43,510 bases of DNA, from NCBI RefSeq assembly GCF_001194135.2, contig NC_068984.1:109678625-109722134 (forward strand), read 5' to 3'. The position numbers were made by a program, and so were the translations under genes. A model generated the notes under the pieces. It did not search any database, was not told the DNA's origin, and saw only the letters and a program-made list of their open reading frames with translations. Origin of the DNA: Octopus bimaculoides (Eukaryota). Shown here piece by piece: positions 14,166 through 35,763 of the stretch; the first letter of the stretch is position 1; the number at the start of each line of letters is the position of its first letter.

Positions 14166-14939
14166 TTTATTGTTATTCAATGTCAGATTCTCTTTAGAGT
14201 CACACAATTGCTTACAATGAAATATTCTGTGTGAATATATCGAGAGTGAAGTATCGTTTCTGGTTGGAACCTCCAGGTTTCCTGTCCTGAAATTGCCTGG
14301 CTAAGAGTTCATACGGGTGCAGGAACAATACCGGACACCTTGTAACTATGTTATGGTACCAACCAGCATGTTACAGAGGGTGTTTAAGAACTCAAAGGTG
14401 CATAAAACGGCAGACCCACACAGTTGTACCCCCGACTTTGCTTCCTGATAACTTCCAAAGGAATTCGTATGTTTTTAATGAAATTTTCTAGAAATACCTC
14501 TCAGATGGTGTAGATTACGATTATATCGGAATTTAATGTGAAAAAAAGCGCCCCAAAAGACCTAGACGTACACACACATATATACTGACACACATAAAAT
14601 GGAACTCGACATTTTGAATAAAGTTGTGATGTGTGTCAATATATATATGTGTGCGCAACTCTACTTTTTTTACATTAAATTTCGATATTGTCGTAATGTA
14701 CGCTACCTGAGAGATATTTGTAGAATAATATCCTTAAACGGTATCCATTATTTTTCTAAAAGTTATTGAGGAAACAATTTTGTGGAGGGTACACCTGTGA
14801 GGGTCTGCTCAAAATATCCCCACAAACACCAAAAACAAGGTGAAGATGACGCTGACTTCACTCTAGTCTTCAGGTGTCCGGGTGCGTCCCCCGGCGCACA
14901 CATTCCCTAGCCTCTAATCACCGTGAAAGGTTGAAAGAG
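14166..14939 (-). ncRNA. Candidate long-hairpin structured ncRNA gene, copy A
   Basis: Conserved blocks 14248-14422 (175 nt) and 14782-14939 (158 nt) are mutually complementary on the minus strand. TCT-like start at 14939, TGACGTCA at 14990-14997, AATAAA (plus TTTATT) at 14166-14171. No conserved ORF signature. Confidence 0.55.
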
Positions 14940-15207
14940 ACTGAAAAATATTTTAAACGAAAGCTTAGGAGAATATTTTGGTGGTATTATGACGTCATAA
15001 TGACAATACGAAAATATTTAGAAATGTCTGGAATAAACAAGAAATTCTTGAATGAATTTCATACGTAGACGCTACACACGTACGCATACAGTAGCACACA
15101 AATTTATAAAGTAAATATATACATATATAATGTATGCAATTACATTAATGTGTGTGTGTATATATGTGTCCTGCCTACCTATCTGTCTGTCAATATATAA
15201 AGATATA

Positions 15208-16050
15208 AAGGCGGCGAGCTGACAGAATCGTTAGCACACAGGACGTAATGCTTAGCGGTTTTTCGTCTGCCGTTACGTTCTGAGTTCAAATTCCACCGAG
15301 GTCGACTTTGCCTTTCATCCTTTCGGGGTCGATAAATTAAGTACCAGTTACGCACTGGGGTCGATCTATTCGACTTAATCCTTTTGTCTGTCCTTGTTTG
15401 TCCCCTCTATGTTTAGCCCCTTGTGGGCAATAAAGAAATAAGAATCGTTAGCATGCCGGATGAAATTCTTAGCGGTATTTGTTCTGCCGTTACGTTAGTT
15501 CAAATTCCGCCGAGGTCGACTTTGCCTTTCATCCTTTCGGGGTCGATATAATCGACTTAATCCTTTGTCTGTCCTTGTTTGTACCCTCTATGTCTAGCCC
15601 CTTGTGGGCAATAGAGAAATAAGAATCGTTAGCACGCCGAGCAAAATGCTTAGTGGGATTTCTTCCGTCTTCATGTTTTGAGTTCAAATTCTGCCGGGGT
15701 CGACTTTGCTTTTCCTCATTTCGGGGTTGATAAATAAGTAGAAGTTGACCACCGAAATCTGTGTAATGGACTTACCTCCTCCTACGAAATAGCTGGCCTT
15801 GTGCCAAAATTTGAAATCAATATATGCAGACATAAAGGCAACGAGGTAGAAGGAAGCTTAGCGTGCCGGGCAAATGCCTAACAGAATTTTCTTTCATTTT
15901 TACGTTTTGAGTTCAAATGCCGCCGGGGTTGAGTTTGTCTTTCATCCTTTCACAATCAATAAAAGAAATAGTAGTTGAACAATGGTTTCGGTGTAATCGA
16001 CTTAGCTCCTCCCCTGAAACTGCTGGCCTTGTGCCAAAATGTGAAATTAA
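15208..16050 (+). mobile_element. Head-to-tail train of ~5 SINE family 2 copies
   Basis: Repeated GAATCGTTAGCA...GAGTTCAAATTCC(A/G)CCGAGGTCGACTTTGCCTTTCATCC units. Confidence 0.8.
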
Positions 16051-16115
16051 TGTATACAGGTATATGTATTTATGATTGAGAATTATTTCTGTATGTATCT
16101 CTTGACTTATCTTCT

Positions 16116-16600
16116 TCACCCACTTAATTCATGGAAGAGTCATGCGGGCAGAGTCTTCGAGCCCGTCTTACATCGGGTCCCGCCAGAAGCAATTGTCTCC
16201 AAATGATTCTGCTGGAACTCCAAATGCATTAACCAAGCTCATGGATGTTATCCAAGCAAATTGCTCATGGTCTACCCATGGAATTCCTGCCAATTGTTGT
16301 TGACCTTAAAACCTGTCCATCGATTCTTTCCTGAGGCATTCTTACCACATTTCCGTAGTATCGGAACTGTGATCTCCCAGTTCGGAGAAGTAGACGCTCT
16401 ACCCAGAACACCTCTCTGATGTCCAGGTTACGCACTCAATAGAGTAAAGTATCTCTAAGGATTATTCGGAGGAATCCGATTTCGGCAGTTTGTATTAACC
16501 ATTGTATTCTTTCGATTATTACCCAAGAGGATCACAACTGCTCCCACTTACTCTACTTCTTCCATAAACATGAAACCACGAAAATGCAGATCTTTCATTT
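16116..16600 (-). mobile_element. Decayed RTE-clade non-LTR retrotransposon 3' fragment
   Basis: Minus-strand translation IQTAEIGFLRII..VRNLDIREVFWVERLLLRTGRSQFRYYGNVVRMPQERI..GRP resembles the post-RT C-terminus of RTE LINEs; several stops. Confidence 0.75.
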
Positions 16601-17103
16601 CAGTCAATGTGCATTATACTAAGCACCACAAAGGTTATAAGAGGTTTTCACTTATTTGTAATAATGAAAGATCATAACAGTATTTGATTACGCAGCACTA
16701 CAACAAGGGGTGTGGTCAGATGTTGGTTTGCAGAGAACTGCGGCTGCTGATGTCCATATTATATTTGTTATGGCTGTAGCGGTAGTTCATTGTTGCTGAT
16801 ATGCTGATTACAACAACAGAGAAAAAGAAAAAAAAAACCCTCAGACTGTTTGATCCACCATGTAAGAAAGCATAAAGAGATTATCTTGAATTATAAGAAA
16901 AATTTCGCGCGCCTTTTATCGCAAGGTTATCTTATAATATAAGAAAGAGCTGTGCGCTCAAAAGCTGCGCTCTCTGGTGTCTCATACAAGACATACCTTG
17001 TTGCGAGAAGAAGTCTTGAGCTGTTCTGTTTTTATGAGAGGGCAAGAGATTGTGAAAGTTTTTGAAGATCCCACCGGAGCGCAAAGTACCTTGTAACTCG
17101 TTG

Positions 17104-17223
17104 CGGCGAAGGTAAAGAATACGCACACCACCCATTTTCGGCGTTTAGGGTTAGGGTCAGGCTTAGGTTTAGGGTTAGAGATACGGCGAAAACGGATGGT
17201 GTGTGTATTCTTTGCCTCCGCCG
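17104..17223. mobile_element. Small fold-back (MITE-like) element with a degenerate TTAGGG core
   Basis: ~40-nt inverted arms (17104-17143 and 17184-17223) flank TTTAGGGTTAGGGTCAGGCTTAGGTTTAGGGTTAG. Confidence 0.65.
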
Positions 17224-17430
17224 TCATTGCGTCTAGATGTTTGTTAGGTGTTTGTCGTGCACCATCTCTTGCAACTTAGGATGGAGGGTATGTTTTCTTT
17301 ATTTTCAATATGCACTACTTGGTGCTCCATGGTCGGTGGCTGTAGAGAGGAAAGTTACTTGTTTCCTCCATGCCTCACATGAAGGTAAAACGAACATGCA
17401 TCTAGTCGCACACACACACCATTTATTGTC

Positions 17431-18125
17431 TACAGGGTTGGGAGGAAAGTAAGCAGGCATTAAAAATTGGTAATAAAATCCATATTCCTTTTCCAAAATT
17501 ATTGAAACAAATGATACATGTTCTTTATTACATGGGAAAATAAAAGTAAATCTTCACATTTCAACGTAAGAACCGGTGGCGTCGACCAGTTTTCTCAAAC
17601 GGCCAGGGATGGAATGAACAACCTTCTGAAGGAAGTCATCTGAGATATCATTGAGAACCTCCTGAATCCGTGTCTCCAAGTCCTCCGGTGTGTGAGGTTT
17701 TGTCTTGTACACCTGTTTTGTGTAACCCCAGAAGTAAAAGTCACATGGAGTGAGATCCGGACTTCTTGGAGTTCTGGACTTCTGCGGTCACAGTCTTCAG
17801 GTTTTAGCTCCTGCACGTAATGGGCTTTCCACGGATGAAAATTCAGTTCTTTATGCAACACCATACATATTGTGTGTCTTGTTAGTCCATTTTCACAAGC
17901 TGCTTGACGTGTTAATTTTTGCGGGCTGCGATTAAACATTTCCTGTACTGTTGCCATGTTCTCCACTGATCACAGAACCCGTCAAATTTGGTCGTCAGAT
18001 TTGCATGACAAATTTTTATCGTCTTCGGACGTAGTGTTTCATACTTACCTTTGCATGCCCGCCATGGACCAAAAAAATGGAATTCTGCACTTCTGCACTG
18101 AACAGTCAAGCGACCGGCCATCTGG
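17431..18125 (-). mobile_element. Internally deleted Tc1/mariner element
   Basis: HTH-like region RSPQKLTRQAACENGLTRHTICMVLHKELNFHPWKAHYVQEL is fused by deletion/frameshift to PRSPDLTPCDFYFWG...LRKLVDATGSYVEM (stop ~17554). TA-CAGGG end at 17431; the partner TIR was not found. Confidence 0.8.
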
Positions 18126-19772
18126 AAAATAAGGAATAAAACAATAAGACAATACGAAAATAGGAAATCCCCATTAGTGTTGTCTATTTAAAAAATGTTT
18201 TCGTCATGACTTCAGTGATACCAAAAATTCTATAAGCAATTTGCACCATAAATCTCATCGGAGGTCCACAATTGAGCATTACTCTCCTCGCATTTGGAAC
18301 AGAGCTGTTGCTGCACACATACTCATACTAGACCGTACTTAGTAAAAAGGACACAAGCCCGATTGTCTATCACCATAAGCGAGCTACGTCTTCTCTCTGC
18401 ACTCCAAATCATGCCGTCTTCACTCAACCATTAGACTCAATCGTCTCTCTTTTCTCATGATGCTTGTTGTACCCAATCTCTTAGGCTCCATATGATTCAC
18501 TACACTCTGCCGTTTCTCTTCAGAATCTCTTGTGGATTCGCTTGATTTGCCCAATTGGAGGTCCATAGGGTGGCTGCTAAGTCCGCTAGAAATAGCAGCA
18601 AATCTCGCTCACTACATGAATGAACACAAAAAACATGAGCTGTGATATCTCTGGTGCCAAACTGTATCAATCTCTTTCTTCCCCTTGGATAACATTGTTG
18701 GCATGAAGAGTGGATATTGGTATGCATGGGTGACCGCTGGTCTTCCATAAACAACCTTTGCCTGGACTTATGTCTCGGAGGGTAACTATCTATTCGTCTT
18801 GGAAAGGGCATAACAAAAATAGATATTGGTTGAATTTACGATCTAAGCGGTGAGTGTTCATCTCACTGAGACAGACTGTGTTTTGGTTTTCATTTTACCC
18901 TAGTGAATACCGAGATACGTGCCTTAATGTATAAGGGTTGATACGAGTGGAAGTAAAGAAGAAACATCGCACAGCTTAAGGGACCAAACGTTTATGGACA
19001 GAAGTAACTTCACGAAAGACCACAAACTAATTTGCGTGCGGGTGTATGTGAGGGAGAGTGAGAGTGAGAAAGAGAGAGGGAGAGAGAGAGAGGGAGATGT
19101 TGCACATAAACAACGTTGTTACTTCCAAACACATTGTACGATTATAACCAAAGTCGTATTGTCAAATTGTGTTTGCAGCTATAGTGATTATAAGAAAATT
19201 ATCGTACAATTAATGAAGCAACTACTTCACTTTATTAGAGACAAGCTTTAAAGCCGCATTCCGTAGTGGGGACATTTAAGTTAGCTCCTGCGCGGGTTAA
19301 TAGGCCTGTGACCCAAATCTAAAAGGATCTAAATAGTATGACTATAATACGTCTATAATGACTATATGTTCTGGTGGTGTTTGATCAGAGGTAAAAGGTG
19401 GATGAGAATTAATTTTGTAAAGCATTCATTCTATCATTCCAGTCCCCAGTTGAATTCGAACTGTTGGCCAATTTGTCCCAAAGTTCTTATCTCGACGTAA
19501 AATTAACGAAGCGAATGTCATTTATCTTCCCCTTGATCCCTGACGTCATCTGATCAACGCCAAACAAGATGGCGTAAATCAGCCAAGTTTTTTACCTGCT
19601 AGAAGTCGCAACCCATATGCTTTTAAATCACAGCCCAACACTGGATGTTCAAGAACCAAATGAAGGGCAAATTTTCAATATCGGGAACATTCTGATTCCA
19701 AAACGGTATAATATGTGTAAGTAGAGCAAATGTAGACTGAGATACAGGAGTCGCAGGTAGACAGAATTTCGC

Positions 19773-19930
19773 TTGGCAGAATCGTTAGCACGCTGGACGA
19801 AACACTTAGCGGTATGTCGCCCATCGCTACGTTCTGAGTTCAAAATCCGCCGAGGTCAACTTTGGATGTAACCGATTACTCTCCTTCCCACAAATTTCAG
19901 GCCTTGTGCCTATAGTAGAAAGGATTATAA
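19773..19930 (+). mobile_element. SINE family 2 insertion specific to unit B
   Basis: Interrupts GAATTTCGC^...TTATAAC, which is contiguous in units C, D and E. Confidence 0.7.
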
Positions 19931-20269
19931 CTGAAGTATCAAGAAAATATTATCAAGCATTTTAATAGCAGCAAACTTGTGTTTTATTTAAACAGTTACC
20001 GAGTTTATAACCCTACACTTGACACCTGCCTGTGAACTATATGTTGAGTAACTTTTATTTCATGTTGATAAGGCGGTGAGTGGCAGACTGGTGGCATTTC
20101 GTCCATCTTTGCAATCTGAGTTCAACTTCTGCCGAGGTCGATGGTTATCTTGATCCTTTTGATGTTGATAAAATAGGTGCCAGTGATGCATTGGGGTCAA
20201 TAGGATCGACTAGTCACTCCACCAAATTTCAAGCCTTGTTCCTAGAGAAGAAAGAAATATATGTACGAT

Positions 20270-21038
20270 TTTCATTTATCGATCCTTACTATCAGATTCA
20301 TTTACAGTAACACGATTGTTTACAATGAAATATTCTGTGTGAATATATCGAGAGTGAAGTATCGTTTCTGGTTGGAACCTCCAGGTTTCCTGCCCTGAAA
20401 TTGCCTGGCTAAGAGTTCATACGGGTGCAGGAACAATACCGGACACCTTGTAACTATGTTATGGTACCAACCAGCATGTTACAGAGGGTGTTTAAGAACT
20501 CAAAGGTGCATAAAACGGCAGATCCACACAATTGTGCCCCCGACCTTTGTTTCCTAATAACTTCCATTGGTATATTTTTAATGAAATTTTCTAGAAATAC
20601 CTCTCAGATAGTGTAGATTACGATTATGTCGGAATTTAATGTGAAAAAAAAGCCCCCAAAAGACGTGGACGTACAAAAATATATACTGACACACATAAAA
20701 GGGAAAATAAAATTTAGAAAACAAATTGTGATGCGTGTTAATATATATATATGTGCGCAAACTCTATTTTTTTACATTAAATTCCGATATAGTCGTAATG
20801 CACGCTATCTGAGGGATATTTGTAGAATATTTCCCCAAAAGGTATCCAATTTTTACAGAAAGTTACGAAGAAACAATTGTGTGGAGGGCACACCTGTGAG
20901 GGTCTGCTCAAAATATCCCCACAAACACCAAAAACAAGGTGAAGATGACTCTAACTTCACTCTAGTCTTCAGGTGTCCGGGTACGTCCCCCGACGCACAC
21001 ATTCCCTAGCCTCTAATCACCGTGAAAGGTTGAAAGAG
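20270..21038 (-). ncRNA. Candidate long-hairpin structured ncRNA gene, copy B
   Basis: Blocks 20356-20530 and 20881-21038; TGACGTCA at 21089-21096. Two substitutions in block 1 relative to the other copies, one breaking a predicted pair. AATAAA reads GATAAA here. Confidence 0.5.
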
Positions 21039-21654
21039 ACTGAAAGCTAGTTGAAACGAAGGCCTTGGAGAAAACTTTTCCGATATTGTGACGTCATAAC
21101 GACAATATGAAGAAATACAGAAATGTCTGGAATAGACGAGAAATTCTTGAATGAATTTCGTACGAAACGCTACACGCGCAGGCATACAATAGCACATTCG
21201 AATTTACAAAACAAATATTTACATATATAATGTATGCATTTACATCAATATGTTTGTGTGTATCGCATATGTGTGTGTTTGTGTGTGTTCACATATGTGC
21301 GTGTGTGTGTGTGTGCCTGTGTGTGTTTTTTTTTGTGTGTGTGCATCCCTATCTTTCTACCAATATAAACAGATACAAGGGCGGGAGTCGCACGAATGTT
21401 GGGCATGAAAGGCACCTCGTGAATGCGATATGGTTTAAAAACCCAGGTCAGTGGTAAGGCGGGGTTCGAAGGGCCCGTTATAATCCCGCCTCCACTCCAT
21501 CTGTTACGTCTTATTGTGTGCTATCATCATCCGTATTATATACATTTCTTAGAATTTTAAAAAAGGACCCTAATCGCATTTCTTGTAAAATCATTCGATT
21601 TCATTGTGTTGTCCCTTCTATGTATGTTGTTATGCATAATAAAAAATTCAGAAT

Positions 21655-21875
21655 CGGTACCACGCCGGGCGAAATGCTTAGTGGTATTTCGTCTGCCGAT
21701 GCGTTCTTAGTTCAAATTCCGCCGAGGTCGACTTTGCCTTTCATCTTTTCGGGGTCGATTAAATAAGTACCAGGTACGCAATGGGGTCGATGTAATCGAT
21801 TTAATCCCTTTGTCTGTCCTTGTTCAGCCCCTCTGTTTAGCCCTTTGTGGGCAATAAAGAAATAAGAATCATTAG
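21655..21875 (+). mobile_element. SINE family 2
   Basis: Well-preserved copy of the same motif set. Confidence 0.8.
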
Positions 21876-22371
21876 CGCGCCCATTCAAATAATGTTATTA
21901 TGTTAATAGGGAATTGTATTCCCTTCTGATTTTCGAAGAATTGCTAGGATCGCGCCTGCACACACACACACACACATTTACTGTCTATATGTATATAGTG
22001 ACTCCCTTGATTTTGCTAATTTTTGACAACCATTATTGCTCATACTACGAGCTGTTCGAGATCACTATCCATACCAAATGTACTTTGTAGGGTTGGCAGC
22101 CTAATTGCCGCCGAACAATTTGTTCTTTTTCTAACGTACCAGTAGCGCCCCCAATCGGACTGTTTAAACGTAGTTCAAATGAACAGAAAACAAAGGACAG
22201 AAACAGGTGAGGCAACGACAGGCGTGTGTATTAGTTAGACGTTCGGGAAAAATGGAAAAGTCTTTGACGTTTCGAGTCAATCATTTTCGACAAAAAGAGA
22301 TGAGGAGATAAAGATGGAGAGATCAAGAAAGCAACGTAGATATACACGCACGCATGCACACACATACGAAC

Positions 22372-22419
<48 letters not shown>

Positions 22420-22859
22420 AAACGAACACGCGAAGAAACCTATGTACACATGCTTGTATGTGTTTATGAAAGCATGTATGAGTGTGAAATCAACTTGAAA
22501 ATTATTTATTTATGAATTTTTAATGTATACACCCACAGTTTACAAGTCTCCATCATTACTTTATACATACATATGCACATACATCAGACAGTATGCTATT
22601 TTTTCTGTGAGATTCGTTAAAGCAAATACTTAAGACAGCTAGGACCACATCGCAATGACTTTCCTTTCTGCTCAAGCCCAGATTCTCCACTCTCCAACAA
22701 TTATCGTTATTCAACAACGGCAGTTTCCAAAATATTTTTACCCGACAGACTGATTTCGTGCAAGATAATTTTTCCACACACCGTGGGATCATATGCATAA
22801 GAAAACGCAATCATGTGAATAACATAATTTATTTATTACCTGTATATGATGTCATTTGT

Positions 22860-23105
22860 GTAGGCACGTGGCTTAGTGGTTAGGATGTCAGCACCATGAT
22901 CGTAAGATTGTGGTTTCGATACCTGGACCGGGCGATGTGTTGTGTTCTTGAGCAAAACACTTCATTTCACGTTGCTCCAGTCCACTCCGCTGGCAAAAAT
23001 GAATAACGCTGCGATGGTCTGGCATCCCGGCCATCTGGGGAACACTTACGCCATTGAAACCGGGCCCATAAGCTGTCTAGGCTTTAAAAGGGCGCATTTA
23101 TTATT
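22860..23105 (+). mobile_element. tRNA-derived SINE related to family 3
   Basis: GTGGCTTAGTGGTTAGG...GGTTTCGATACC...TTGAGCAAAACACTT. Confidence 0.65.
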
Positions 23106-23159
23106 TATTTTATATGATGTCATTTACATCTATAAAAAACACTCTGCAGACTACCATAT

Positions 23160-23485
23160 TCTTTTACTTGTTTCAGTGATGCGACTGTAGCCATGCTGGA
23201 GCATCAGCTTCTGTGGAATAAATCGACCCGAGGATTTATTTCTTAATCCTGGTACTTATTCTATCGGTCTCTTTACCTAGAGTAGAGGAAACATACACAC
23301 ACCAACAACTGTTGTCATGCACATATAAGAGGGGATTCATTCATTTTCCATCTACCAAATCAATTTACAGGGCTCTGGTTGGCTCGAGACAAAAGTAGAT
23401 GACACTTGCCGAAGGTACCACGCTGTGGGAATGATTCTGGAAACATGTGATTGGGACGTAGGCTTCTTACCACTCGGCCATGCCT
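23160..23485 (-). mobile_element. SINE family 1, diverged
   Basis: Reverse-strand homology to the SINE1 head and tail. Confidence 0.65.
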
Positions 23486-25382: not shown

Positions 25383-25416
25383 TGACGTCACCTGACAAAC
25401 GCCAACCAAAATGGCG
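25383..25416 (+). promoter_or_regulatory. Second CRE + YY1-like module (also 19541-19574, 29186-29219, 33199-33232)
   Basis: TGACGTCA followed exactly 25 nt later (start to start) by AA(G/A)ATGGCG in units B-E. Confidence 0.4.
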
Positions 25417-25944
25417 TGAATCAGCAAAGCTTTACCTGCTAGAAGTAGCAACCCAAGTGCTTTTAAATCTGATCCCAATACTGAATGTCCAAGAACCAAA
25501 TAAATGAAGGAGAGATTTCTCAATCCCAGGATCATTCTGATTCCAAAACGGTATAATATGTCTATGTAGGGCAAACGTAGACTGAGATACAGGCGTCGCA
25601 GACAGACAGAATTTCGCGTTTATTATAACAGAAATATCAAGAAAATATCATCAAACATTTTCAGGGCAGTAAACTTGTCTTATTTCAACGCTTACCGTGT
25701 TTATAACCCTGCTATTTACATGTACCTGTGGACTATACGTTGAGTATATTTTATTTCGTGCTGATAAGGCAGTGAGCGACAGAATGGTTAGCATGCCGGT
25801 GGCATTTGGTCTACTTTTGCAGTTTGAGTTCAAATTCTGCCTAGGTCGATGGTTCCCTCGATCCATTTGTTGTTGATAAAATAAGCGCCAGTCAATATTT
25901 CAAGCTTTGTTCCTAGAGAAGAAAGGAATATTTAATGTATTATT

Positions 25945-26718
25945 TTTATTTACCGATCCTTACTATCAGATTCATTTACAGTAACACGACTGTTTTCAAT
26001 GAAATATTCTTTGTGAATACATCGTGGGTGAAGTATCGTTTCTGGTTGGAACCTCCAGGTTTCCTGTCCTGAAATTGCCTGGCTAAGAGTTCATACGGGT
26101 GCAGGAACAATACCGGACACCTTGTAACTATGTTATGGTACCAACCAGCATGTTACAGAGGGTGTTTAAGAACTCAAAGGTGCATAAAACGGCAGACCCA
26201 CACAGTTGTACCCCCGACTTTGTTTCCTAGTAACTTCCAAACGAATTCGTATATTTTTAATGAAATTTTCTAGAAATACCTCTCAGATGGTGTAGATTAC
26301 GATTATGTCGGAATTTAATGTGAAAAAAGTCCCCCAAAAGACGTAGACCTACACACATATATATACTGACACACATAAAATGGAACTCGAAATTTTGAAT
26401 AAAGTTGTGACGTGTGTCTATATATATCTGTGTGCGCAACCTCTACTTTTTTTTACATTATATTCCGATATAGTCGCAATGCACGCTATCTGAGAGGTAT
26501 TTGTAGAATATTTCCCTAAAAGGTATCCAAGTTTACAGAAAGTTACGAGGAAACAATTGTGTGGAGGGCACACCTGTGAGGGTCTGCTCAAAATATCCCC
26601 ACAAACACCAAAAACAAGGTGAAGATGACTCTGACTTCACTCTAGTCTTCAGGTGTCCGGGTACGTCCCCCGACGCACACATTCCCTAGCCTCTAATCAC
26701 CTTGAAAGGTTGAAAGAG
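25945..26718 (-). ncRNA. Candidate long-hairpin structured ncRNA gene, copy C
   Basis: Blocks 26030-26204 and 26561-26718; TGACGTCA at 26769-26776; TTTATT at 25945-25950. Confidence 0.55.
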
Positions 26719-26776
26719 ACTGAAAACTAGTTGAAACGAAGGCTTTGGAGAAAACTTTTCCGATATTGTGACGTCA
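26712..26776 (-). promoter_or_regulatory. Putative promoter: CRE/ATF palindrome plus TCT-type initiator (present in all five copies)
   Basis: Minus-strand TCTCTTT fits the TCT consensus YCTYTYY. TGACGTCA lies 51 nt upstream in A-D and 49 nt in E. No TATA box. Confidence 0.45.
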
Positions 26777-27371
26777 TAATGACAATATGAAGACATACAG
26801 AAATGTCTGGAATAGACGAGAAATTCTTGAATGAATTTCGTACGTAAATTCTACACGCGCACGCACACAACAGCACACACAAATTCATACAACAAATATT
26901 TACATATATAATGTATGCATTTACATCAATGTATGTGTTCTGTGTGTCTCTGTGTGTTTCTGTGTGTTCGAAATTGGCAAACTCAGAAATTAAGAAGGGC
27001 GTGCTATTGGAGAGAGAGAAAGAGGGGAGAGATTAGTAGAACTGTTTGGAAAAAAAAAAGAGTTGAAGTGTGACCACTTCAGTTTAGATACGACGAGTTG
27101 CCATCTGTTGTAATTTTCGACGATCTTATGCAATATTTGTTGTAATTGTCTGTTAATGAAGAAGAGACATGACTGTAAAGTGAACTGTAATTTAAAAGGA
27201 CAGTAAAATGAAACTGCTTGCTTCGGGGGGCGAGTCAGCCATTTCATCCTAATTTTTTATCATAGTCAAAGTCCATTCGATATGTGTTTTATATGTAGCC
27301 CCAATGTCTTGTTTTGTCTGTTCTTGTGGTGTCTCCCCTTTATAAAGGCCATGTGATCTAAATAAAGGAAA

Positions 27372-28195
27372 TCGAGCTGGCAGAAAAGGTAGCTCGCAGG
27401 GCAAAATGCTTAGCGGTATTTCGTCTGTCTTTATGTTCTGAGTTCAAATTCTGCCGAGGTCGACTTTGCCTTTCATCCTTTCGGGGTCGATAAATTAAGT
27501 ACCAGTTGCGTACTGGAGTCGATCTAATCGACTGGCTCCCTCCCCAAATATCTTGTGCGTTGTGCCTAGAGTAGAAAAGAATCTATAGCGCGTCGGTCGA
27601 AATGCTTAGCAATATTTCGTCTGCCGCTACGTTCTGATTTCAAATTCCGCTGAGATCGACTTTGCCGTACATTCTCTCCGGGTCGGTAAATTAAGTACCA
27701 GCTGGGTATTAGGGTCGATGCTATCGACTATTTCCCTCCCCACAAAATCCAAGTGAGCTGGAGGAACCGTTAGCATGCTGGGTATTTCGTCCATCTTCAT
27801 GTTTTGAGTTCAAATTCCACCGAGGTGGACTTTGCCTTTCAGCCTTTCCGGGTTGATAAATGAGTTCCAGTCGAACACAGGAATCTTTGTAATGGCCTTA
27901 CCCCTCCCCCAAAGTTGCTGGCCTTGTGCCAAAGTTTTAAATCAATATATACAGATCTAGGTGCAGCGAGCTGGCAGGATGTTTAGCATGCCGGACAAAA
28001 TGCCTAACAGAATTTTCTTTCGTCTTGTCTTTCTGAATTGAATTCTTTCGTCTTCACTTTCTGCCTTTCATCCTTTCATCCTTTCATCCTTTCAGGGTCC
28101 ATAAAATAGATACCAATAGAACACTTTGGTCGATGTAATCAAGGTTCAAACTGCCCTGAAATTGCTGGCCTTGTGCCAAAATTTGAAACCAATAT
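27372..28195 (+). mobile_element. SINE family 2 train (unit C)
   Basis: Four tandem SINE2 copies, paralogous to 31220-32025. Confidence 0.8.
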
Positions 28196-28251
28196 ATACA
28201 GGTATATGTGTTTGCGTGTGTAAATATGTGTGTATCTAAATCTCGAGTCAA

Positions 28252-28740
28252 CTTCACCCACTTTTTACTCTTGGAAGGGTCATGGGGGCAGAGTTCTCGA
28301 GCCCGTCTTATATCGGGTTCCTTCAAAAGCAACCGTCTCCAATGATCCTGGTGGAACCCCAAACGCTATCAACCAAGCTCATGGATGTTATCCAAACAAA
28401 TTGCTCATGGTCTATCCCTGGGATTTCTGCCGGTTGTTTTTGACCATAAGACCTGTTCATCGATTCTTTCCTGATTCTTACCACATTTCCATAGTTTTGG
28501 AGCTGTGATCTCCCGATTCGGAGAAGTAGAGTCTCTACCTGGAACACCTCTCTGATGTCCAGGCTACGCACTCAATAGATTGACGTATCTCTAAATATTC
28601 TTCAGAAGAACTCCATTTCGGTTGTTAGTTTTCACCATCGTATTCTTTCGATTATTGCCCAAGAGGATCACAACTGTTCTCTCTTATTCTACTTCTTCCA
28701 AATACCTGAAGCTACTAAAATGGAGATTTTCGTTGCCTTC
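28252..28740 (-). mobile_element. Decayed RTE-clade LINE 3' fragment (paralog of 16116-16600)
   Basis: ORF 28323-28571 reads RSLDIREVFQVETLLLRIGRSQLQNYGNVVR; sequence aligns with the 16.1-16.6 kb fragment. Confidence 0.75.
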
Positions 28741-29778
28741 AGAGAGAGGGGGGGGGAGTGAGAGAGAGGTTGCGCATAATCAACGTTCTTAGTCCCAAAC
28801 ACATTGTACAATTATAACCAAAGTCGTATTGTTAAATTGTGTTGGTAGTGATATATGAAAATTATATATAATTATCGAACAATTAATGAAGCAACTAGTT
28901 AACTTTATTAGAGACCAGTTTAAAAGCCGCACTCCGTGCGGACTTTCTGCTGGCGGCCCAAAATTAAAGAGACCTAAATAGCATGACTTTAATACGTCTA
29001 TAATGACAATACGCCGCGCTGGTATTTGATCAGAAGTGAAGGATGGATGAGCATTTATTCTTTAAAGCGATCATTCCATTATTCCCGTCTCAAGTCGAAT
29101 TCCTACTGTTCGTCAATTTGCTCCTAAGTTCTTATCTTGATGTAAAATTGAAGAAGCGTATGTTATTTATCTCCCCTTTGATCCCTGACGTCAACTGATA
29201 AACGCTAAACAAGATGGCGTGAATCAGCCAAGTTTTACCTGTTAGAAGTAGCCACCCAAATGATTTTAAATCAGATCCCGACACTGGATGTTCAAGAACC
29301 AAATGGAGGATAAATTTTCATTCCCAGGATCATTCCAACAAAATGTAAAATATGTCTATGTAGGGCAAATGTAAACTGAGATACAGGCGTTGCAGACAGA
29401 CAGAATGTCGCGTTTCTTATAACAGAAATATCAAGAAAATATCATCAAACATTTTCAGAGCAGTAAACTTGTGTCTTATTTCAACGCTTACCGTGTTTAT
29501 AACCCTGCTATTTACATGTACCTATGGTCTATGCGTAGAGTAACTTTTATTTCGTGTTGATAAGGCAGTGAGCGGCAGAATGGTTAGCATGCCGGAAGCA
29601 TTTGGTCTACCTTAGCAGTCTGAGTTCAAATTCTGCCTAGGTCGATGTTTCCCTCAATCCATTTGTTGTTGATAAAAATAAGTGCCAGTCAAGATTTGGG
29701 TTGAATATGTTCAACTACTTACACCACCAAATTACAAGCTTTGTTCCTAGAGAAGAAAGGAATATTTCATGTATTATT

Positions 29779-30552
29779 TTTATTTACCGATCCTTACTAT
29801 CAGATTCATTTACAGTAACACGATTGCTTACAATGGAATATTCTGTGTGAATATATCGTGGGTGAAGTATCGTTTCTGGTTGGAACCTCCAGGTTTCCTG
29901 TCCTGAAATTGCCTGGCTAAGAGTTCATACGGGTGCAGGAACAATACCGGACACCTTGTAACTATGTTATGGTACCAACCAGCATGTTACAGAGGGTGTT
30001 TAAGAACTCAAAGGTGCATAAAACGGCAGACCCACACAATTGTGCCCCCGACTTTTGTTTCCTAATAACTTCCAAAGGAATTCGTATGTTTTTAATGAAA
30101 TTTTCTAGAAATACCTCTCAGATGGTGTAGATTACGATTATATCGGAATTTAATGTGAAAAAAAGCCCCCAAAAGACGTAGACGTACACACACATATATA
30201 CTAACACACATATACTAACACACATAAAGTTTTGAATGAAGTTGTGATGTGTGTCAATATATATATGTGTGCGCGCAACCTCTACTTTTTTTTACATTAA
30301 ATTTCGATATAGTCGCAATGTACGCTATCTGAGGGGTAGAATATTACCCTAAAATGTATCCAATTTTTACAGAAAGTTACGAAGAAACAATTGTGTGGAG
30401 GGCACACCTGTGAGGGTCTGCTCAAAATATCCCCACAAACACCAAAAACAAGGTGAAGATGACTCTGACTTCACTCTAGTCTTCAGGTGTCCGGGTACGT
30501 CCCCCGGCGCACACATTCCCTAGCCTCTAATCACCGTGAAAGGTTGAAAGAG
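29779..30552 (-). ncRNA. Candidate long-hairpin structured ncRNA gene, copy D
   Basis: Blocks 29864-30038 and 30395-30552; TGACGTCA at 30603-30610; TTTATT at 29779-29784. Confidence 0.55.
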
Positions 30553-31219
30553 ACTGAAAACTAGTTGAAACGAAGGCGTAGGAGAAAACGTTTCCGATAT
30601 TGTGACGTCATAATGACAATATGAAGAAATATAGAAATATCTCGAATAGAGGAGAAATTCTTGAATGAATTTCATATGTAAAGGCTACACGCGCACGCAT
30701 ACAACAGCGCACACTGAAATTCATACAATAAATATTTACATATATAACGTATGCATTTACATCAATATATGTGTTCTGTGTTTCTGTGTGTGTTTCTGTG
30801 TGTGTTCACATCTAAAAATGTTATCAGAGTGAAATTGGCAAATTCAGAAGTTAAGAAGGGCATGCTATTGGAGAGATTAGTAGAACTGTTTGGAAAAAAA
30901 AAAAGAAGAGTGGAAATATCACCACTTCAGTTTAGATACGACAAGTTGCCGCCTGTTGTAATTTTCGACGATCTTATGCAATATTTGTTGTAATTGTCTG
31001 TTAATAAAAAAGATACATGACTGTAAAGTGAACTGTAATTAAAAAAAACAGTAAAATGAAACTGCTTGCTTTGTGGGGCGAGTAAGCCATTTCATCCTCA
31101 TTTTGTATCATAGTCATAGCCCATTCGATATTTGTTTTATATGTAGCCCCAATGTCTTGTTTTGTCTGTCCTTGTGGTGTCCTCTTTTTATAAAGGCCAT
31201 GTGATCTAAATAAAGGAAA

Positions 31220-32025
31220 TCGAGCTGGCAGACAAGCTAGCACGCAGGGCAAAATGCTTAGCGGCATTTCGTCTGTCTTTATGTTCTGAGTTCAAATTCT
31301 GCTGAGGTCGACTTTGCCTTTCATCCTTTCGGAGTTGATAAATTCAATACCAGTTGCGTACTGGAGTCGATCTAATCGACTGGCCCCCACCCCAAATATC
31401 TCGTGCGTTGTGCCTAGAGTAGAAAAGAATCTATAGCGTGCCGGGCGAAATGCTTAGCAGTATTTCGTCTGCCGCTACGTTCTGAGTTCAAATTCCGCTG
31501 CGATCGACTTTGCCTTACATCCTTTCCGGGTCGAAAATTAAGTTCCAGTTGGGTACTAGGGTCGATGTGATCGACTTTTTCCCTCCCCACAAAATCCAAG
31601 TGAGCTGGAGGAACCGTTAGCATGCTGGGCATTTCGTCCATCTTCATGTTTTGAGTTCGAACTCCACCGAGGTCGACTTTGCCTCTCAGCATTTCCGGGT
31701 TGATAAATGAGTTCCAGTCGAGCACAGGAATCTTTGTAATGGCCTTACCCCTCCCCCAAAGTTTCTGGCCTTGTGCCAAAGTTTTAAATCAATATATACA
31801 GATCTAGATGCAGCGAACTTGCAGGATGTTTAGCATGCCGGACAAAATGCCTAACAGAATTTTCTTTCGTCTTCAGATTCTGAATTGAAACGCTGCCTGG
31901 ATCGGCTTTATCTTACATCCTTTCAGGGTCCATAAAATAGATACCAATAGAACACTGTGGTCGATGTAATCAAGGTTCCAACTGCCCTGAAATTGCTGGC
32001 CTTGTGCCAAAATTTGAAACCAACA
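31220..32025 (+). mobile_element. SINE family 2 train (unit D)
   Basis: Paralogous to 27372-28195. Confidence 0.8.
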
Positions 32026-32081
32026 TATACAGGTATATGTGTTCGCGTGTGTGAATATGTGTGCATATAAATCTCAACTCA

Positions 32082-32569
32082 TCTTCACCCACTTTACTCT
32101 TGGAAGGGTCATCGGAGCAGAGTCCCCGAGTCTTACACCGGGTTCCGTCAGAAGCAACCGTCTCCAATTGACCCTGCTGGAACCCCAAACGCTATCAACC
32201 AAGCTCATAAGTGTTATCCAAACAATTTTCTCATGGTCTACCTCAGGGATTCCTACCGGTTGTTTTGACCATAAAACCTATTCATCGATTCTTTCCTGAG
32301 ATATTCTTACCACATTTCCATAATAACGGAGCTGTGATCTCCCGATTCGGAGAAGTAGAGTCTCTACCTGGAACACCTCTCTAATGTCCAGGCTATGCAC
32401 TCAATAGAGTGACGTATCTCTAAATATTCTTCGGAAGAACCCCATTTCAGTTGTTAGTATTCACCATCGTATTCTTTCGGTTATTGCCAAAGAAGATCAC
32501 AACTGCTCTCGTTTATTCTACTTCTTCCACATACTTGAATCTACTAAAATGGAGATCTTTCATTGCCTT

Positions 32570-32570
<1 letters not shown>
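32082..32570 (-). mobile_element. Decayed RTE-clade LINE 3' fragment (third paralog)
   Basis: Aligns with 28252-28740 and 16116-16600. Confidence 0.75.
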
Positions 32571-32607
<37 letters not shown>

Positions 32608-33795
32608 GAGAGAGAGGGTGGAAGAGAGAGAGGGGGGAAGAGAGAGAGAGAATGTGAGCGAGCGAGATGTTGCGCATAAACAACATTCTTAGTCCCAAAC
32701 ACATTGTACAATTATAACCAAAGTCGTATTGTGAAATTGTATTGGTAGCTATAGTGATATATGTAAATTATATATAATTATCGAACAATTAATGAAGCAA
32801 CTAGTTAACTTTATTAGAGACCAGTTTAAAAGCCGCACTCCGTGCGGACTTTCTGCTGGCGGCCCAAAATTAAAGAGACCTAAATAGCATGACTTTAATA
32901 NNNNNNNNNNNNNNNNNNNNNNNNNNNNNNNNNNNNNNNNNNNNNNNNNNNNNNNNNNNNNNNNNNNNNNNNNNNNNNNNNNNNNNNNNNNNNNNNNNNN
33001 NNNNNNNNNNNNNNNNNNNNNNNNNNNNNNNNNNNNNNNNNNNNNNNNNNNNNNNNNNNNNNNNNNNNNNNNNNNNNNNNNNNNNNNNNNNNNNNNNNNN
33101 NNNNNNNNNNNNNNNNNNNNNNNNNNNNNNNNNNNNNNNNNNNNNNNNNNNNNNNNNNNNNNNNNNNNNNNNNNNNTATTTATCTCCCCTTTGATCCCTG
33201 ACGTCAACTGATAAACGCTAAACAAGATGGCGTGAATCAGCCAAGCTTTAGCTGTTAGAAGTAGCCACCCAAATGTTTTTAAATCAGATCCCGACACTGG
33301 ATGTTCAAGAACCAAATGAAGGACAAATTTTCATTCCCAGGATCATTCTGATTCCAACAAAATGTAAAATATGTCTATGTAGGGCAAACGTAGACTGAGA
33401 TACAGGCGTCGCAGACAGACAGAATTTCGCGTTTCTTATAACAGAAATATCAAGAAAATATCATCAAACATTTTCAGAGCAGTAAACTTGTCTTATTTCA
33501 ACGCTTATCGTGTTTATAACCCAGTTATTTACATGTACCTGTGGACTATACGTTGAGTATATTTTATTTCCTGCTGATAAGGCAGTGAGCGACAGAATGG
33601 TTAGCAAGCCGGCGGCATTTGGTCTACCTTTGCAGTCTGAGTTCAAATTCTACCTAGGTCGATGGTTCCCTCGATCCATTTGTTGTTGATAAAAATAAGC
33701 GCCAGTCAAGATTTGGGTTGAATATGTTCAACTACTCACACCACCAAATTTCAAGCTTTGTTCCTAGAGAAGAAAGGAATATTTAATGTATTATT

Positions 33796-34574
33796 TTTAT
33801 TTACCGATCCTTACTATCAGATTCATTTACAGTAACACGACTGTTTTCAATGAAATATTCTTTGTGAACACATCGTGGGTGAAGTATCGTTTCTGGTTGG
33901 AACCTCCAGGTTTCCTGTCCTGAAATTGCCTGGCTAAGAGTTCATACGGGTGCAGGAACAATACCGGACACCTTGTAACTATGTTATGGTACCAACCAGC
34001 ATGTTACAGAGGGTGTTTAAGAACTCAAAGGTGCATAAAACGGCAGACCCACACAATTGTGCCCCCGACTTTTGCTTCCTAATAACTTCCAAAGGAATTC
34101 GTATATTTTTAATGAAATTTTCTTCAAATACCTCACGAATAGTGTAGATTACGATTATGTCGGAATTTAATGTGAAAAAAAGTCCCTGAAAAGACGTAGA
34201 CGTACACACACATATATACTAACACACATAAAATGGAACTCGAAATTTTGAATAATGTTGGGATGTGTGTCAATATATATATTTGTGCACGCAACCTCTA
34301 CTTTTTTCTACATTAATTTTCGATATAGTCGTAATGTACTCTATCTGAGAGGCTTTTGTAGAATACTTCCCTAAAAGGTATCCAATTTTTACAGAAAGTT
34401 ACGAAGAAACAATTGTGTGGAGGACACACCTGTGAGGGTCTGCTCAAAATATCCCCACAAACACCAAAAACAAGGTGAAGATGACTCTGACTTCACTCTA
34501 GTCTTCAGGTGTCCGGGTACGTCCCCCGACGCACACATTCCCTAGCCTCTAATCACCGTGAAAGGTTGAAAGAG
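33796..34574 (-). ncRNA. Candidate long-hairpin structured ncRNA gene, copy E
   Basis: Blocks 33881-34055 and 34417-34574; TGACGTCA at 34623-34630; TTTATT at 33796-33801. Confidence 0.55.
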
Positions 34575-34825
34575 ACTGAAAACTAGTTGAAACGAAGGCG
34601 TAGGAGAAAACTTGTGATACTGTGACGTCATAATGACACTATGAAGAAATATACAAATCTTTGGACATGAATGATTTTTAATTTCAAACACATACAGACA
34701 TATACACAAACGCATGGGCACACACAAACATATACGGACGTAGAAGCTGAAATATACATGTACGTATTATATATTCATGCATTCATACACGCATGCACGC
34801 ACACACATACAGATGTATGTATACA

Positions 34826-34864
<39 letters not shown>

Positions 34865-34948
34865 TACATAGGATATATAAGCATATGCATCTATACATAC
34901 ATATATGTATAAATACATACAAATACAGACACACAAACATATACACAG

Positions 34949-34981
<33 letters not shown>

Positions 34982-35442: not shown

Positions 35443-35481
<39 letters not shown>

Positions 35482-35731: not shown

Positions 35732-35763
<32 letters not shown>

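What the first reader, a model, noticed from the sequence alone, without database searches (positions are those of the whole stretch)
14166..34630. Five-copy tandem family of a candidate uncharacterised ~770-nt long-hairpin ncRNA gene
Seen: five units each carry a 175-nt block (identical in A, C, D and E; 2 substitutions in B) and a 158-nt block (a few substitutions, no indels). The spacer, SINEs and RTE fragment in the same units show many substitutions and indels. The blocks are complementary to each other, and each unit has promoter-like and 3'-end-like signals at fixed distances. The differences are mostly amino-acid-changing in the open frames I checked, and 1-nt indels occur next to block 1, which argues against protein coding. 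I could not match it to U1-U12, U3, 7SK, 7SL, RNase P/MRP or telomerase RNA from memory. Inference: a dosage-amplified Pol II structured RNA. It could be a Dicer-processed hairpin RNA like Drosophila hpRNAs, an ADAR substrate or decoy (coleoids edit heavily), or a new structural RNA.
Basis: partly seen in the sequence, partly recalled or inferred. Interest (0 to 1): 0.9.

Follow-up and report, generated by a model that had tools for sequence, protein, structure and literature searches.

The report
Five-copy conserved non-coding gene array
Five tandem copies each carry two almost invariant, non-protein-coding segments (177 and 156 nt) flanking a faster-evolving 390-nt hairpin; this is most likely an unclassified multicopy non-coding RNA gene, but no transcription or cross-species evidence could be obtained here.

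Summary
The repeat is real. There are five tandem units spaced 3.8-6.1 kb apart, each with a ~1 kb core. Block 1 (177 nt) is identical in A, C, D and E and has 2 substitutions in B. Block 2 (156 nt) has 5 variable sites and no indels. Spacers differ by 9.5-24% and the segment between the blocks by 11-17%. The assembly gap at 32901-33176 lies in the D/E spacer, and its flanks are collinear with unit C, so it does not affect any core.

The "770-nt long hairpin" reading is only partly right. A ~390-nt imperfect palindrome sits between the blocks and takes in only their inner 13-18 nt. The rest of the two blocks is not complementary above chance. The palindrome is the least conserved part of the core and shows almost no compensatory change.

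The blocks have stop codons in all six frames. They match nothing in Rfam, Pfam or 5.8 billion proteins.

Minus-strand signals sit at fixed positions: TGACGTCA at -55, an Inr-like TCAGTC exactly where conservation begins, CAG|GTGTG exactly where it drops, and AATAAA 75-78 nt after block 1 (4 of 5 units).

Best reading (confidence about 0.4): a lineage-restricted, amplified Pol II non-coding RNA gene whose functional parts are the two invariant blocks. The palindrome would be a tolerated or spliced-out insert. Transcription is not shown.

The parts
14166..14997 (-). Unit A candidate transcription unit, from the AATAAA-like signal to the upstream TGACGTCA
   Evidence: Alignment; coordinates
20271..21096 (-). 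Unit B candidate transcription unit; its poly(A) hexamer is the variant AATGAA
25945..26776 (-). Unit C candidate transcription unit, used as the reference copy for folding
29779..30610 (-). Unit D candidate transcription unit
33796..34630 (-). Unit E candidate transcription unit, last of the array; homology to the other units ends about 35 nt beyond it, near 34665
14246..14422 (-). Block 1, copy A (177 nt, identical to C, D and E); 3' conserved domain on the minus strand
20354..20530 (-). Block 1, copy B (2 private substitutions)
26028..26204 (-). Block 1, copy C
29862..30038 (-). Block 1, copy D
33879..34055 (-). Block 1, copy E
14791..14946 (-). Block 2, copy A (156 nt); 5' conserved domain on the minus strand, predicted to form three stem-loops
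20890..21045 (-). Block 2, copy B
26570..26725 (-). Block 2, copy C; folds with z=-3.3 on the minus strand
30404..30559 (-). Block 2, copy D
34426..34581 (-). Block 2, copy E
14410..14808 (.). Imperfect palindrome (long hairpin), copy A; 146 arm-to-arm pairs
20518..20907 (.). Imperfect palindrome, copy B; 143 arm-to-arm pairs
26192..26587. Imperfect palindrome, copy C; arms from I2, I5, I1 and I3; apex 26375-26411 is (CA)n(TA)n-like
30026..30421 (.). Imperfect palindrome, copy D
34043..34443 (.). Imperfect palindrome, copy E
26769..26776 (.). Invariant palindromic TGACGTCA (CRE/ATF-type site), -55 to -48 from the putative start; also at 14990-14997, 21089-21096, 30603-30610 and 34623-34630
   Evidence: the distance was counted on the sequence
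26718..26723 (-). Inr-like TCAGTC, invariant, at the exact start of block 2 conservation; putative +1 A at 26721 (A 14942, B 21041, D 30555, E 34577)
26569..26577 (-). CAG|GTGTGC donor-like site; conservation drops immediately after it (variable at +5 and +6). The last exon-like base is 26574 (A 14795, B 20894, D 30408, E 34430)
26172..26229 (-). Two acceptor-like sites: YAG|G at 26227-26229, kept as CAG, TAG or TAG in all copies despite substitutions, and the invariant TTTGAG|TT ending at 26173
26113..26122 (-). 10-nt segment in block 1 (AGGUGUCCGG on the minus strand) exactly complementary to 26651-26660 in block 2; the only inter-block pairing outside the palindrome besides a 7-mer
   Evidence: I12
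25945..25950 (-). AATAAA on the minus strand, 78 nt after block 1; also at 14166-14171, 29779-29784 and 33796-33801. B has AATGAA at 20271-20276
32901..33176 (.). Assembly gap in the spacer between cores D and E. Not part of the element; its flanks are collinear with unit C

Best explanation
Each unit is an independently promoted, minus-strand, Pol II-type non-coding RNA gene of about 780 nt, measured from the start site to the poly(A) signal. The gene has been tandemly amplified to five copies.

The functional parts are the two nearly invariant segments:
- a 5' domain (block 2, about 150 nt) predicted to form three stem-loops;
- a 3' domain (block 1, about 177 nt).
Both would be read at nucleotide level, as RNA sequence or structure bound by a protein or RNA partner, not as codons.

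The ~390-nt imperfect palindrome between them is an older inverted duplication or foldback-type insert that evolves almost freely. It is either spliced out (CAG|GUGUG ... YAG) or tolerated as a stem that holds the two domains together. Sequence exchange among the copies (gene conversion) plus purifying selection keeps the blocks identical while the spacers and the palindrome drift.

Shown: the array, the conservation contrast, the absence of coding potential, the positions of the motifs, and the predicted folds.
Inferred: transcription, strand, polymerase, splicing and function.
For: - Conservation contrast: block 1 has 0-2 differences in 177 nt and block 2 has 1-4 in 156. The palindrome segment has 38-59 in about 350, and the spacers differ by 9.5-24%. 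Fisher p=9e-14 and 1.5e-9.
- Gene conversion alone cannot explain this. The palindrome lies between the blocks and carries many mutually incompatible site partitions (AC|BDE, BD|ACE, BC|ADE, AD|BCE and others). Exchange therefore occurs across the core, yet the palindrome stays 11-17% diverged.
- Non-coding: at least one stop in every frame of both blocks. The ATG-initiated 49-aa ORF shows 4 non-synonymous and 0 synonymous differences. There were no hits in Pfam or in a six-frame search of 5.8 billion proteins.
- Strand and transcript boundaries coincide with conservation boundaries:
  - conservation starts within 4 nt of an invariant TCAGTC, 47 nt downstream of an invariant TGACGTCA;
  - it drops right after CAG|GTGT;
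  - AATAAA follows block 1 at 75-78 nt in 4 of 5 units.
- Folding of block 2 gives z=-3.3 on the minus strand. The joined blocks give z=-3.0 on minus (2 of 300 shuffles as stable) against -1.4 on plus.
- Four of the 7 variable block sites fall in predicted loops (by inspection).
- Only five copies exist in the window and there are no degenerate extras.
Against: - There is no expression data of any kind.
- No homologue from another genome could be retrieved, so constraint is inferred only from paralogues that also exchange sequence.
- Block 1 alone does not fold better than shuffles (z about -1).
- The donor-like site lies inside the paired base of the hairpin. The invariant acceptor-like site is a disfavoured GAG, and its pyrimidine tract is weak.
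- The TATA-like sequence upstream is not conserved.
- B lacks a canonical AATAAA.
- TGACGTCA is a palindrome and so gives no strand information by itself.
- The motif matches were recognised by eye, not scored against a background.
Confidence: 0.4

Rival explanations
1. The long duplex is the functional part. The transcript would be a hairpin RNA that feeds Dicer (endo-siRNAs, as in Drosophila hpRNA loci) or binds and titrates ADAR. The invariant blocks would be flanking processing or stabilising domains.
For: - All five copies keep 141-148 arm-to-arm pairs out of about 178, at -142 to -165 kcal/mol. The full unit folds with z=-12.6.
- Copies keep slightly more pairs than random placement of the same substitutions predicts: 676 against 662 +/- 4.7, P about 0.004.
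- Paired columns change less often than unpaired ones: 63 of 287 against 33 of 91.
- hpRNA arms are known to evolve fast (established knowledge).
Against: - The arms are the least conserved part of the core.
- Only 2 of 156 pairs show a compensatory change, and the covariation term is +5.4 kcal/mol.
- Wobble-preserving transitions (A>G plus C>U = 18) equal the pair-breaking types (G>A plus U>C = 18), so there is no RNA-level strand signature.
- Left arms resemble the left arms of other copies (about 86%) far more than their own right arms (about 70%), so the arms have not been homogenised against each other.
- The excess of kept pairs may only reflect the hypermutable microsatellite-like apex.
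- This reading gives no reason for more than 300 nt of invariant non-duplex sequence.
Confidence: 0.15
2. There is no RNA function. The blocks would be DNA-level elements (protein-binding regulatory or architectural sequence of a macrosatellite-like array), or they would be kept alike by locally restricted, possibly biased, gene conversion.
For: - Reticulate site patterns show that sequence exchange among the copies happens.
- The blocks are more GC-rich (46-48%) than the palindrome (35%) and the window (37%), as biased conversion would produce.
- No transcription evidence exists.
- Block 1 has no significant fold.
Against: - Two separate conversion hot-spots would have to coincide exactly with the two blocks and skip the 350 nt between them, even though that stretch also shows exchange.
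- Ordinary protein-binding elements do not require 156-177 consecutive invariant bases (established knowledge).
- The conservation boundaries coincide with start-site-like, donor-like and poly(A)-like motifs.
- The joined blocks fold better on the minus strand than on the plus strand.
Confidence: 0.15
3. Two separate small RNA genes per unit are transcribed convergently: block 2 on the minus strand from the TGACGTCA side, and block 1 on the plus strand from the left flank. Both would end in the shared palindrome, which acts as a bidirectional 3'-end or terminator element.
For: - Block sizes (156 and 177 nt) are in the snRNA range, and the 4-6 kb tandem units resemble snRNA gene arrays (established knowledge).
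- Block 2 alone folds significantly.
- An AUAUUUUGA Sm-like stretch lies between its last stem-loop and the palindrome.
- Block 1 is closed by a 12-bp stem (I10).
- A TATA-like AATATAT lies about 26 nt upstream of that stem on the plus strand in A, B and D.
Against: - That TATA-like motif is disrupted in C and E.
- Block 1 does not fold better than shuffles on either strand.
- No snRNA, snoRNA or other Rfam family matched, even at E up to 10.
- No 3'-box or T-run terminator is conserved at the block ends.
- The Sm-like site lacks the 5' purine of the consensus.
Confidence: 0.1
4. It is a transposon-derived composite: a non-autonomous element with conserved ends and a variable foldback interior, or a MITE inserted into an older element, simply carried along by segmental duplication.
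For: - The palindrome looks like a foldback or MITE.
- Its only Rfam echoes are MITE-like plant and animal miRNA hairpin models, far below threshold.
- The spacers are full of SINE-like repeats.
Against: - The copies sit at the same position in homologous spacers, so they were duplicated in place and not inserted independently.
- Transposition-level selection cannot keep in-place duplicates identical.
- The outer ends of the blocks share no terminal inverted repeat.
- No target-site duplication flanks the palindrome (by inspection).
- There are no other copies in the 43.5-kb window.
Confidence: 0.05
5. It encodes a micropeptide: the 49-aa ORF from ATG 26682 on the minus strand, or a ~42-aa spliced version.
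For: An ATG-initiated ORF is present in block 2 in all copies.
Against: - All four substitutions inside it change the amino acid.
- It runs into the variable palindrome.
- It has no homologue among 5.8 billion proteins and no Pfam hit.
- Most of the invariant sequence, including all of block 1, would be untranslated.
Confidence: 0.03

Closest known systems
Tandem small-RNA gene arrays under concerted evolution (for example the human RNU2 6.1-kb array, spliced-leader RNA and 5S arrays)
   Same: Units of a few kb are repeated head-to-tail. Each has a short, nearly invariant transcribed segment and its own proximal promoter element near -55. The spacers are diverged and TE-ridden, and there are signs of sequence exchange between copies.
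   Different: No snRNA, SL or 5S family matches. There are two invariant segments separated by a 390-nt palindrome. It has an AATAAA rather than a 3' box or T-run, and only five copies.
Drosophila-type hairpin RNA (hpRNA) loci, such as hpRNA1 and hp-CG4068
   Same: A long inverted repeat lies inside a putative Pol II unit, the locus is tandemly duplicated, and it is lineage-restricted.
   Different: Here the arms are the least constrained part and the non-duplex flanks are invariant. No target gene and no small RNAs are known.
MITE or foldback-derived hairpins and transposon-derived introns ('introners')
   Same: There is a ~390-nt imperfect palindrome with a microsatellite-like apex. Donor-like and acceptor-like sites lie near its ends. 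Weak similarity to MITE-type miRNA hairpin models was seen.
   Different: No target-site duplication was found and no other copies are in the window. Splicing is unproven, and the host here is non-coding.
Macrosatellites with a transcribed conserved core (D4Z4 and DXZ4 type)
   Same: kb-scale tandem units contain a conserved promoter-plus-transcript core.
   Different: The copy number is much lower, the spacers are strongly diverged rather than homogenised across the whole unit, and there is no ORF.

Membership tests
Any curated RNA family (U1-U12, U3, 7SK, 7SL, RNase P/MRP, telomerase RNA, vault, Y, ribozymes, snoRNAs, miRNAs) | Covariance-model match at or near the family's gathering score | tested here: not met
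   There were no hits at gathering over the whole window. With lax filters on one unit and on each block alone, only sub-threshold noise appeared: the best result on the blocks was SNORD35 at 15.9 bits against a threshold of 36. Generic miRNA-hairpin models hit the palindrome at 42 bits against 211.
Telomerase RNA | Template complementary to about 1.5 telomere repeats (CCCTAA permutations) | tested here: not met
   No 8-mer permutation occurs in any core; the only matches are in spacers.
Sm-class Pol II snRNA gene | Proximal sequence element near -55 with no TATA | tested here: inconclusive
   An invariant TGACGTCA-containing element lies at -55 to -48 and there is no conserved TATA. No cephalopod PSE consensus was available for comparison.
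Sm-class Pol II snRNA gene | Sm site RAU(4-6)GR between stem-loops | tested here: inconclusive
   Only a loose AUUUUG is present on the minus strand at 26594, within UAUUUUGA. The strict pattern is absent.
Sm-class Pol II snRNA gene | 3' box downstream of the mature end | tested here: not met
   Only a loose GTTTC...AAAAATTGGA was seen after block 2 on reading the sequence, with no clear 3'-box match. Instead, AATAAA lies 75-78 nt after block 1.
hpRNA / endo-siRNA hairpin locus | Long inverted repeat able to form an extended duplex | tested here: met
   Arms of about 180 nt form 141-148 pairs in all five copies.
hpRNA / endo-siRNA hairpin locus | The duplex is the selected part (arms conserved or co-evolving) | tested here: not met
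   The arms are 11-17% diverged against 0-2.6% for the blocks. Only 2 of 156 pairs are compensatory, and there is no wobble-favouring transition bias. There is only a weak deficit of change at paired columns.
hpRNA / endo-siRNA hairpin locus | Dicer-dependent 21-22-nt small RNAs and a complementary target gene | not testable with these tools
MITE / foldback transposon (palindrome only) | Terminal inverted repeats flanked by a target-site duplication | tested here: not met
   Arms are present, but the flanks read ...TTTTGA|GCAGACCC and GGGTCTGC|CGTTTTA, with no direct repeat.
MITE / foldback transposon (palindrome only) | Many dispersed copies | not testable with these tools
   There are none in the window outside the five units. 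The rest of the genome is not available.
Protein-coding exon | Open frame through the conserved segment, with a synonymous bias among differences and homologues | tested here: not met
   Every frame of both blocks has at least one stop. The ATG ORF shows 4 non-synonymous and 0 synonymous changes. No protein or Pfam hits were found.
Spliceosomal intron (palindrome as intron) | GT...AG boundaries, with conservation dropping at the boundaries | tested here: inconclusive
   CAG|GTGTG lies exactly where conservation drops. YAG|G is kept in all copies and TTTGAG| is invariant. However, the pyrimidine tract is weak, the GAG acceptor is disfavoured, and there is no cDNA.
Spliced-leader RNA gene | Short 5' exon plus donor, a downstream Sm site, and the leader found on many mRNAs | not tested
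   A 21-nt AGUCUCUUUCAACCUUUCACG|GUGAUU arrangement can be read at the 5' end. No transcriptome was available. SL trans-splicing is, to my knowledge, not reported in molluscs, and the literature search returned nothing specific.

The most novel reading that the evidence does not exclude
A lineage-specific, dosage-amplified structured RNA of a new family. Two invariant domains would be zipped together by a ~180-bp duplex plus short inter-domain helices, forming a four-way-junction-like core. The duplex might recruit a dsRNA-binding protein such as ADAR or Dicer, while the invariant domains carry the specific function. A variant reading is that a foldback transposon became a spliced intron of a non-coding RNA gene.
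Probability: 0.15. Interest if true: 0.75.

Novelty: new member of a known kind. Interest (0 to 1): 0.45.

Why it matters
If the unit is transcribed, it would be an unclassified, multicopy non-coding RNA with more than 330 nt under nucleotide-level constraint. The locus is unusually easy to test: five near-identical genes, a clear strand prediction, and predicted 5' end, junction and 3' end coordinates. It also bears on how long, nearly perfect RNA duplexes are tolerated in a lineage with heavy A-to-I editing. If it is not transcribed, it is an example of strongly constrained DNA blocks inside a small macrosatellite, which is of modest interest.

Tried and rejected
- Rfam: searched at gathering threshold over the whole window, then at E up to 10 over one unit and over each block alone. 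Nothing credible appeared.
- tRNA and tmRNA scan: none found.
- Protein homology: a concatenated six-frame translation of one core was searched against 5.8 billion proteins, with no hit. Pfam on core and spacer ORFs also gave none.
- Homologous DNA or transcripts:
  - exact-protein contig look-ups for two window ORFs were not on record;
  - 22-mers from both blocks against JGI metagenome contigs and a 20-mer against viral contigs gave zero matches;
- Literature: searches on cephalopod hairpin RNA, on spliced leaders in molluscs, and on octopus lncRNA/tandem/hairpin returned nothing relevant. Six 16-18-mers from the blocks searched as sequence words gave zero papers.
- Telomerase-template scan: negative in the cores.
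- Residual complementarity or direct similarity between the two blocks outside the palindrome: not above shuffles.
- More diverged copies in the window, searched with nhmmer profiles: none.
- ADAR-like A>G bias among paralogue differences in the arms: none, the spectrum is symmetric.
- Considered by eye and rejected: C/D and H/ACA snoRNA boxes (no RUGAUGA), Pol III type-2 A/B boxes and T-run terminators (partial matches only, not conserved), Helitron ends, and hammerhead or other ribozymes (no Rfam hit).

Full report
**What is there.**
The window is AT-rich (37% GC) and full of microsatellites, with ten N gaps. Between about 14.1 and 34.7 kb it holds five head-to-tail units with start-to-start spacing of about 6100, 5680, 3834 and 4020 nt. 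BLASTN of one core against the window finds exactly five ~1000-nt copies at 90-94% identity, plus the self-inverted match of the central palindrome. nhmmer profiles of the two blocks find no further, more diverged copies. The array ends just right of core E: the sequence beyond it shares essentially nothing with the other spacers.

**The assembly gap.**
The gap at 32901-33176 lies in the spacer between cores D and E.
- Its left edge aligns to unit C position 28994 and its right edge to 29164.
- The flanks are therefore collinear, and roughly 169 nt of C-equivalent spacer is missing.
- No core is within 600 nt of the gap, so it has no bearing on the finding.

**Conservation profile.**
In a five-way alignment the core splits into five zones:

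| Zone | Size | Pairwise differences |
|---|---|---|
| Left flank | 78 columns | 1-20 |
| Block 1 | 177 nt | 0-2 (two variable sites, both private to B) |
| Inter-block segment | 354 columns | 38-59 (76 substituted and 28 indel columns) |
| Block 2 | 156 nt | 1-4 (five variable sites, no indels) |
| Right flank | 97 columns | 3-31 |

- Block against inter-block variable sites gives Fisher p=9e-14 (block 1) and 1.5e-9 (block 2).
- Spacers outside the cores differ by 9.5% (C-D), 17-22% (B-C, B-D) and 22-24% (A against the rest).

**The hairpin.**
Inverted-repeat search and folding show a ~390-nt imperfect palindrome. In unit C it spans 26192-26587, with arms I2, I5, I1 and I3 and a (CA)n(TA)n-like apex.
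- All five copies keep 141-148 arm-to-arm pairs, at -142 to -165 kcal/mol.
- The palindrome takes in only the inner 13 nt of block 1 and 18 nt of block 2.
- Outside it, the best inverted alignment between the blocks is one 10-mer (CCGGACACCT/AGGTGTCCGG). Its score of 20 compares with a shuffle mean of 19, and 195 of 500 shuffles score at least as well.
- In MFE folds this 10-mer and a 7-mer (GGUGUUU/AAACACC) extend the helical axis of the hairpin and frame one local stem-loop from each block. This is suggestive but not statistically secure.
- The statement that the blocks are complementary to each other is therefore not confirmed. The element is two non-complementary conserved domains flanking a hairpin.

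**How the hairpin evolves.**
- RNAalifold finds 156 pairs, of which 2 show a double (compensatory) change. The covariation term is +5.4 kcal/mol, which is unfavourable.
- Differences among copies have an ordinary, symmetric spectrum of 43 transitions and 36 transversions, with A>G 10, G>A 9, C>T 12 and T>C 12.
- At paired positions, wobble-preserving transitions (18) equal pair-breaking types (18), so no RNA-strand signature of selection is visible.
- Two weaker results point the other way. Copies keep slightly more pairs than random placement of their substitutions predicts (676 against 662 +/- 4.7, P about 0.004). Paired columns also change less often than unpaired ones (63 of 287 against 33 of 91). 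Both could simply reflect the hypermutable apex.
- Left arms match the left arms of other copies (about 86%) much better than their own right arms (about 70%). The arms are therefore not homogenised against each other, and the palindrome predates the array.
- Informative sites show many mutually incompatible partitions. Hairpin distances are star-like at 11-17%, whereas spacer distances are hierarchical. This indicates sequence exchange among the cores.
- Because that exchange spans the palindrome yet leaves it diverged, the near-identity of the two blocks needs purifying selection, or a much lower mutation rate, and not conversion alone.

**Not coding, not a known RNA.**
- Each of the six frames has at least one stop inside each block.
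- The only ATG-initiated ORF is 49 aa, starting at 26682 on the minus strand. All four differences inside it are non-synonymous (by hand), and it runs into the variable palindrome.
- A concatenated six-frame query of one core found nothing among 5.8 billion proteins. Pfam found nothing.
- Rfam gave nothing at gathering thresholds.
- With lax filters, Rfam gave only generic miRNA-hairpin echoes on the palindrome and noise on the blocks.
- There are no tRNAs and no telomere-template motif in the cores.

**Strand and transcript model.**
On the minus strand, the conservation boundaries coincide with gene-like signals.
- An invariant TGACGTCA lies 44 nt outside block 2 in all units.
- Forty-seven nt further on lies an invariant TCAGTC (Inr-like), within 4 nt of where strict conservation begins.
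- Conservation drops immediately after CAG|GTGT at the block 2/palindrome border, with positions +5 and +6 variable.
- A YAG|G is kept as CAG or TAG in all copies despite substitutions, and an invariant TTTGAG| lies inside block 1.
- AATAAA follows block 1 by 75-78 nt in A, C, D and E, while B has AATGAA.
- Block 2 folds into three stem-loops with z=-3.3 on the minus strand and -2.7 on the plus strand.
- Block 1 alone is unremarkable, with z about -1.
- The two blocks joined fold with z=-3.0 on minus (2 of 300 shuffles as stable) and -1.4 on plus.
- Of the seven variable block sites, four fall in predicted loops, one turns G-U into G-C, and two break pairs (by inspection). These numbers are too few to be a test.
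- All promoter, splice-site and poly(A) assignments are motif recognition plus positional coincidence, not evidence of use.

**Interpretation.**
The best-supported reading is a small tandem family of a minus-strand, Pol II-type non-coding RNA gene. Its functional parts would be the two invariant domains. The palindrome would be an older foldback or inverted duplication that is either spliced out or tolerated as a connecting stem. I put this at about 0.4. The rivals are:
- a duplex-centred hpRNA or ADAR-substrate function (0.15), weakened by the evolutionary pattern of the arms;
- DNA-level function or locally restricted gene conversion without an RNA role (0.15);
- two convergent small RNA genes sharing the palindrome as a 3' element (0.1);
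- a transposon composite (0.05), which cannot explain in-place conservation;
- a micropeptide (0.03).

**Comparison with known systems.**
- In organisation it works most like tandem small-RNA gene arrays under concerted evolution. However, it is not a member of any curated RNA family tested.
- It shares the long inverted repeat with hpRNA loci but fails the feature that the duplex is the selected part.
- The palindrome resembles a MITE or foldback but lacks a target-site duplication.
- I therefore file it as a new member of a known kind (a lineage-restricted multicopy non-coding RNA gene), with a minority chance of being something structurally new.

**Limits.**
- No eukaryotic genome or transcriptome could be searched by DNA. 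Metagenome and viral scans, protein-based contig look-ups and literature searches all came back empty.
- Transcription, cross-species conservation, genome-wide copy number and even the organism remain untested.

Noticed in passing
window 17557-17969 (minus strand), inside the spacer of unit A: Stop-free stretches such as ...RSPDLTPCDFYFWGYTKQVY... and ...LHKELNFHPWKAHYVQEL... look, from memory, like remnants of a Tc1/mariner-type transposase. Pfam gave no hit. This insertion and neighbouring ones would account for units A and B being about 2 kb longer than C and D.
   Followed up: partly
window 17145-17180: A short degenerate interstitial telomere-like tract (TTAGGGTTAGGG...TTAGGTTTAGGGTTAG) lies in the spacer of unit A.
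   Followed up: partly
window 15223-15408, 15655-15776, 21649-21834, 27381-27762, 27781-27902, 31229-31749: A ~120-190-nt SINE-like repeat family (D6/D7) occurs one to several times per spacer, sometimes as adjacent copies 196 nt apart. A second family is at 8547-8649, 15732-15834, 15962-16064, 28104-28206 and 31935-32037.
   Followed up: no
window 28140-28169 and 31970-32000 against block 1 positions 27-56: There is weak, non-significant similarity (nhmmer E 0.16-0.32) between part of block 1 (CCTGAAATTGCCTGGC) and the tail of a spacer SINE-like repeat (CCTGAAATTGCTGGCC). It could be chance or a trace of the block's origin.
   Followed up: partly
window 41080-41680: About 600 nt of strongly purine-rich (G+A) sequence on the plus strand, with GC skew 0.43 and few C. 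A 165-aa low-complexity ORF lies on the opposite strand. The protein is not on record in the contig collection.
   Followed up: partly
window 1-13000 and 34700-40200: Nine further assembly gaps (2541-2550, 4216-4929, 5692-6306, 7264-7993, 9231-9624, 9949-9958, 10544-10905, 34982-35442, 39929-40101) lie mostly next to (TA)n, (TG)n and (AG)n microsatellites. There is also a 191-nt, two-copy tandem repeat at 2358-2761.
   Followed up: no
window 20626-21009 (plus strand), unit B core: Unit B alone has a 127-aa ATG ORF running through the palindrome and block 2 on the plus strand. It is broken in the other four units, has no Pfam hit and is not on record, so it is taken as chance.
   Followed up: yes
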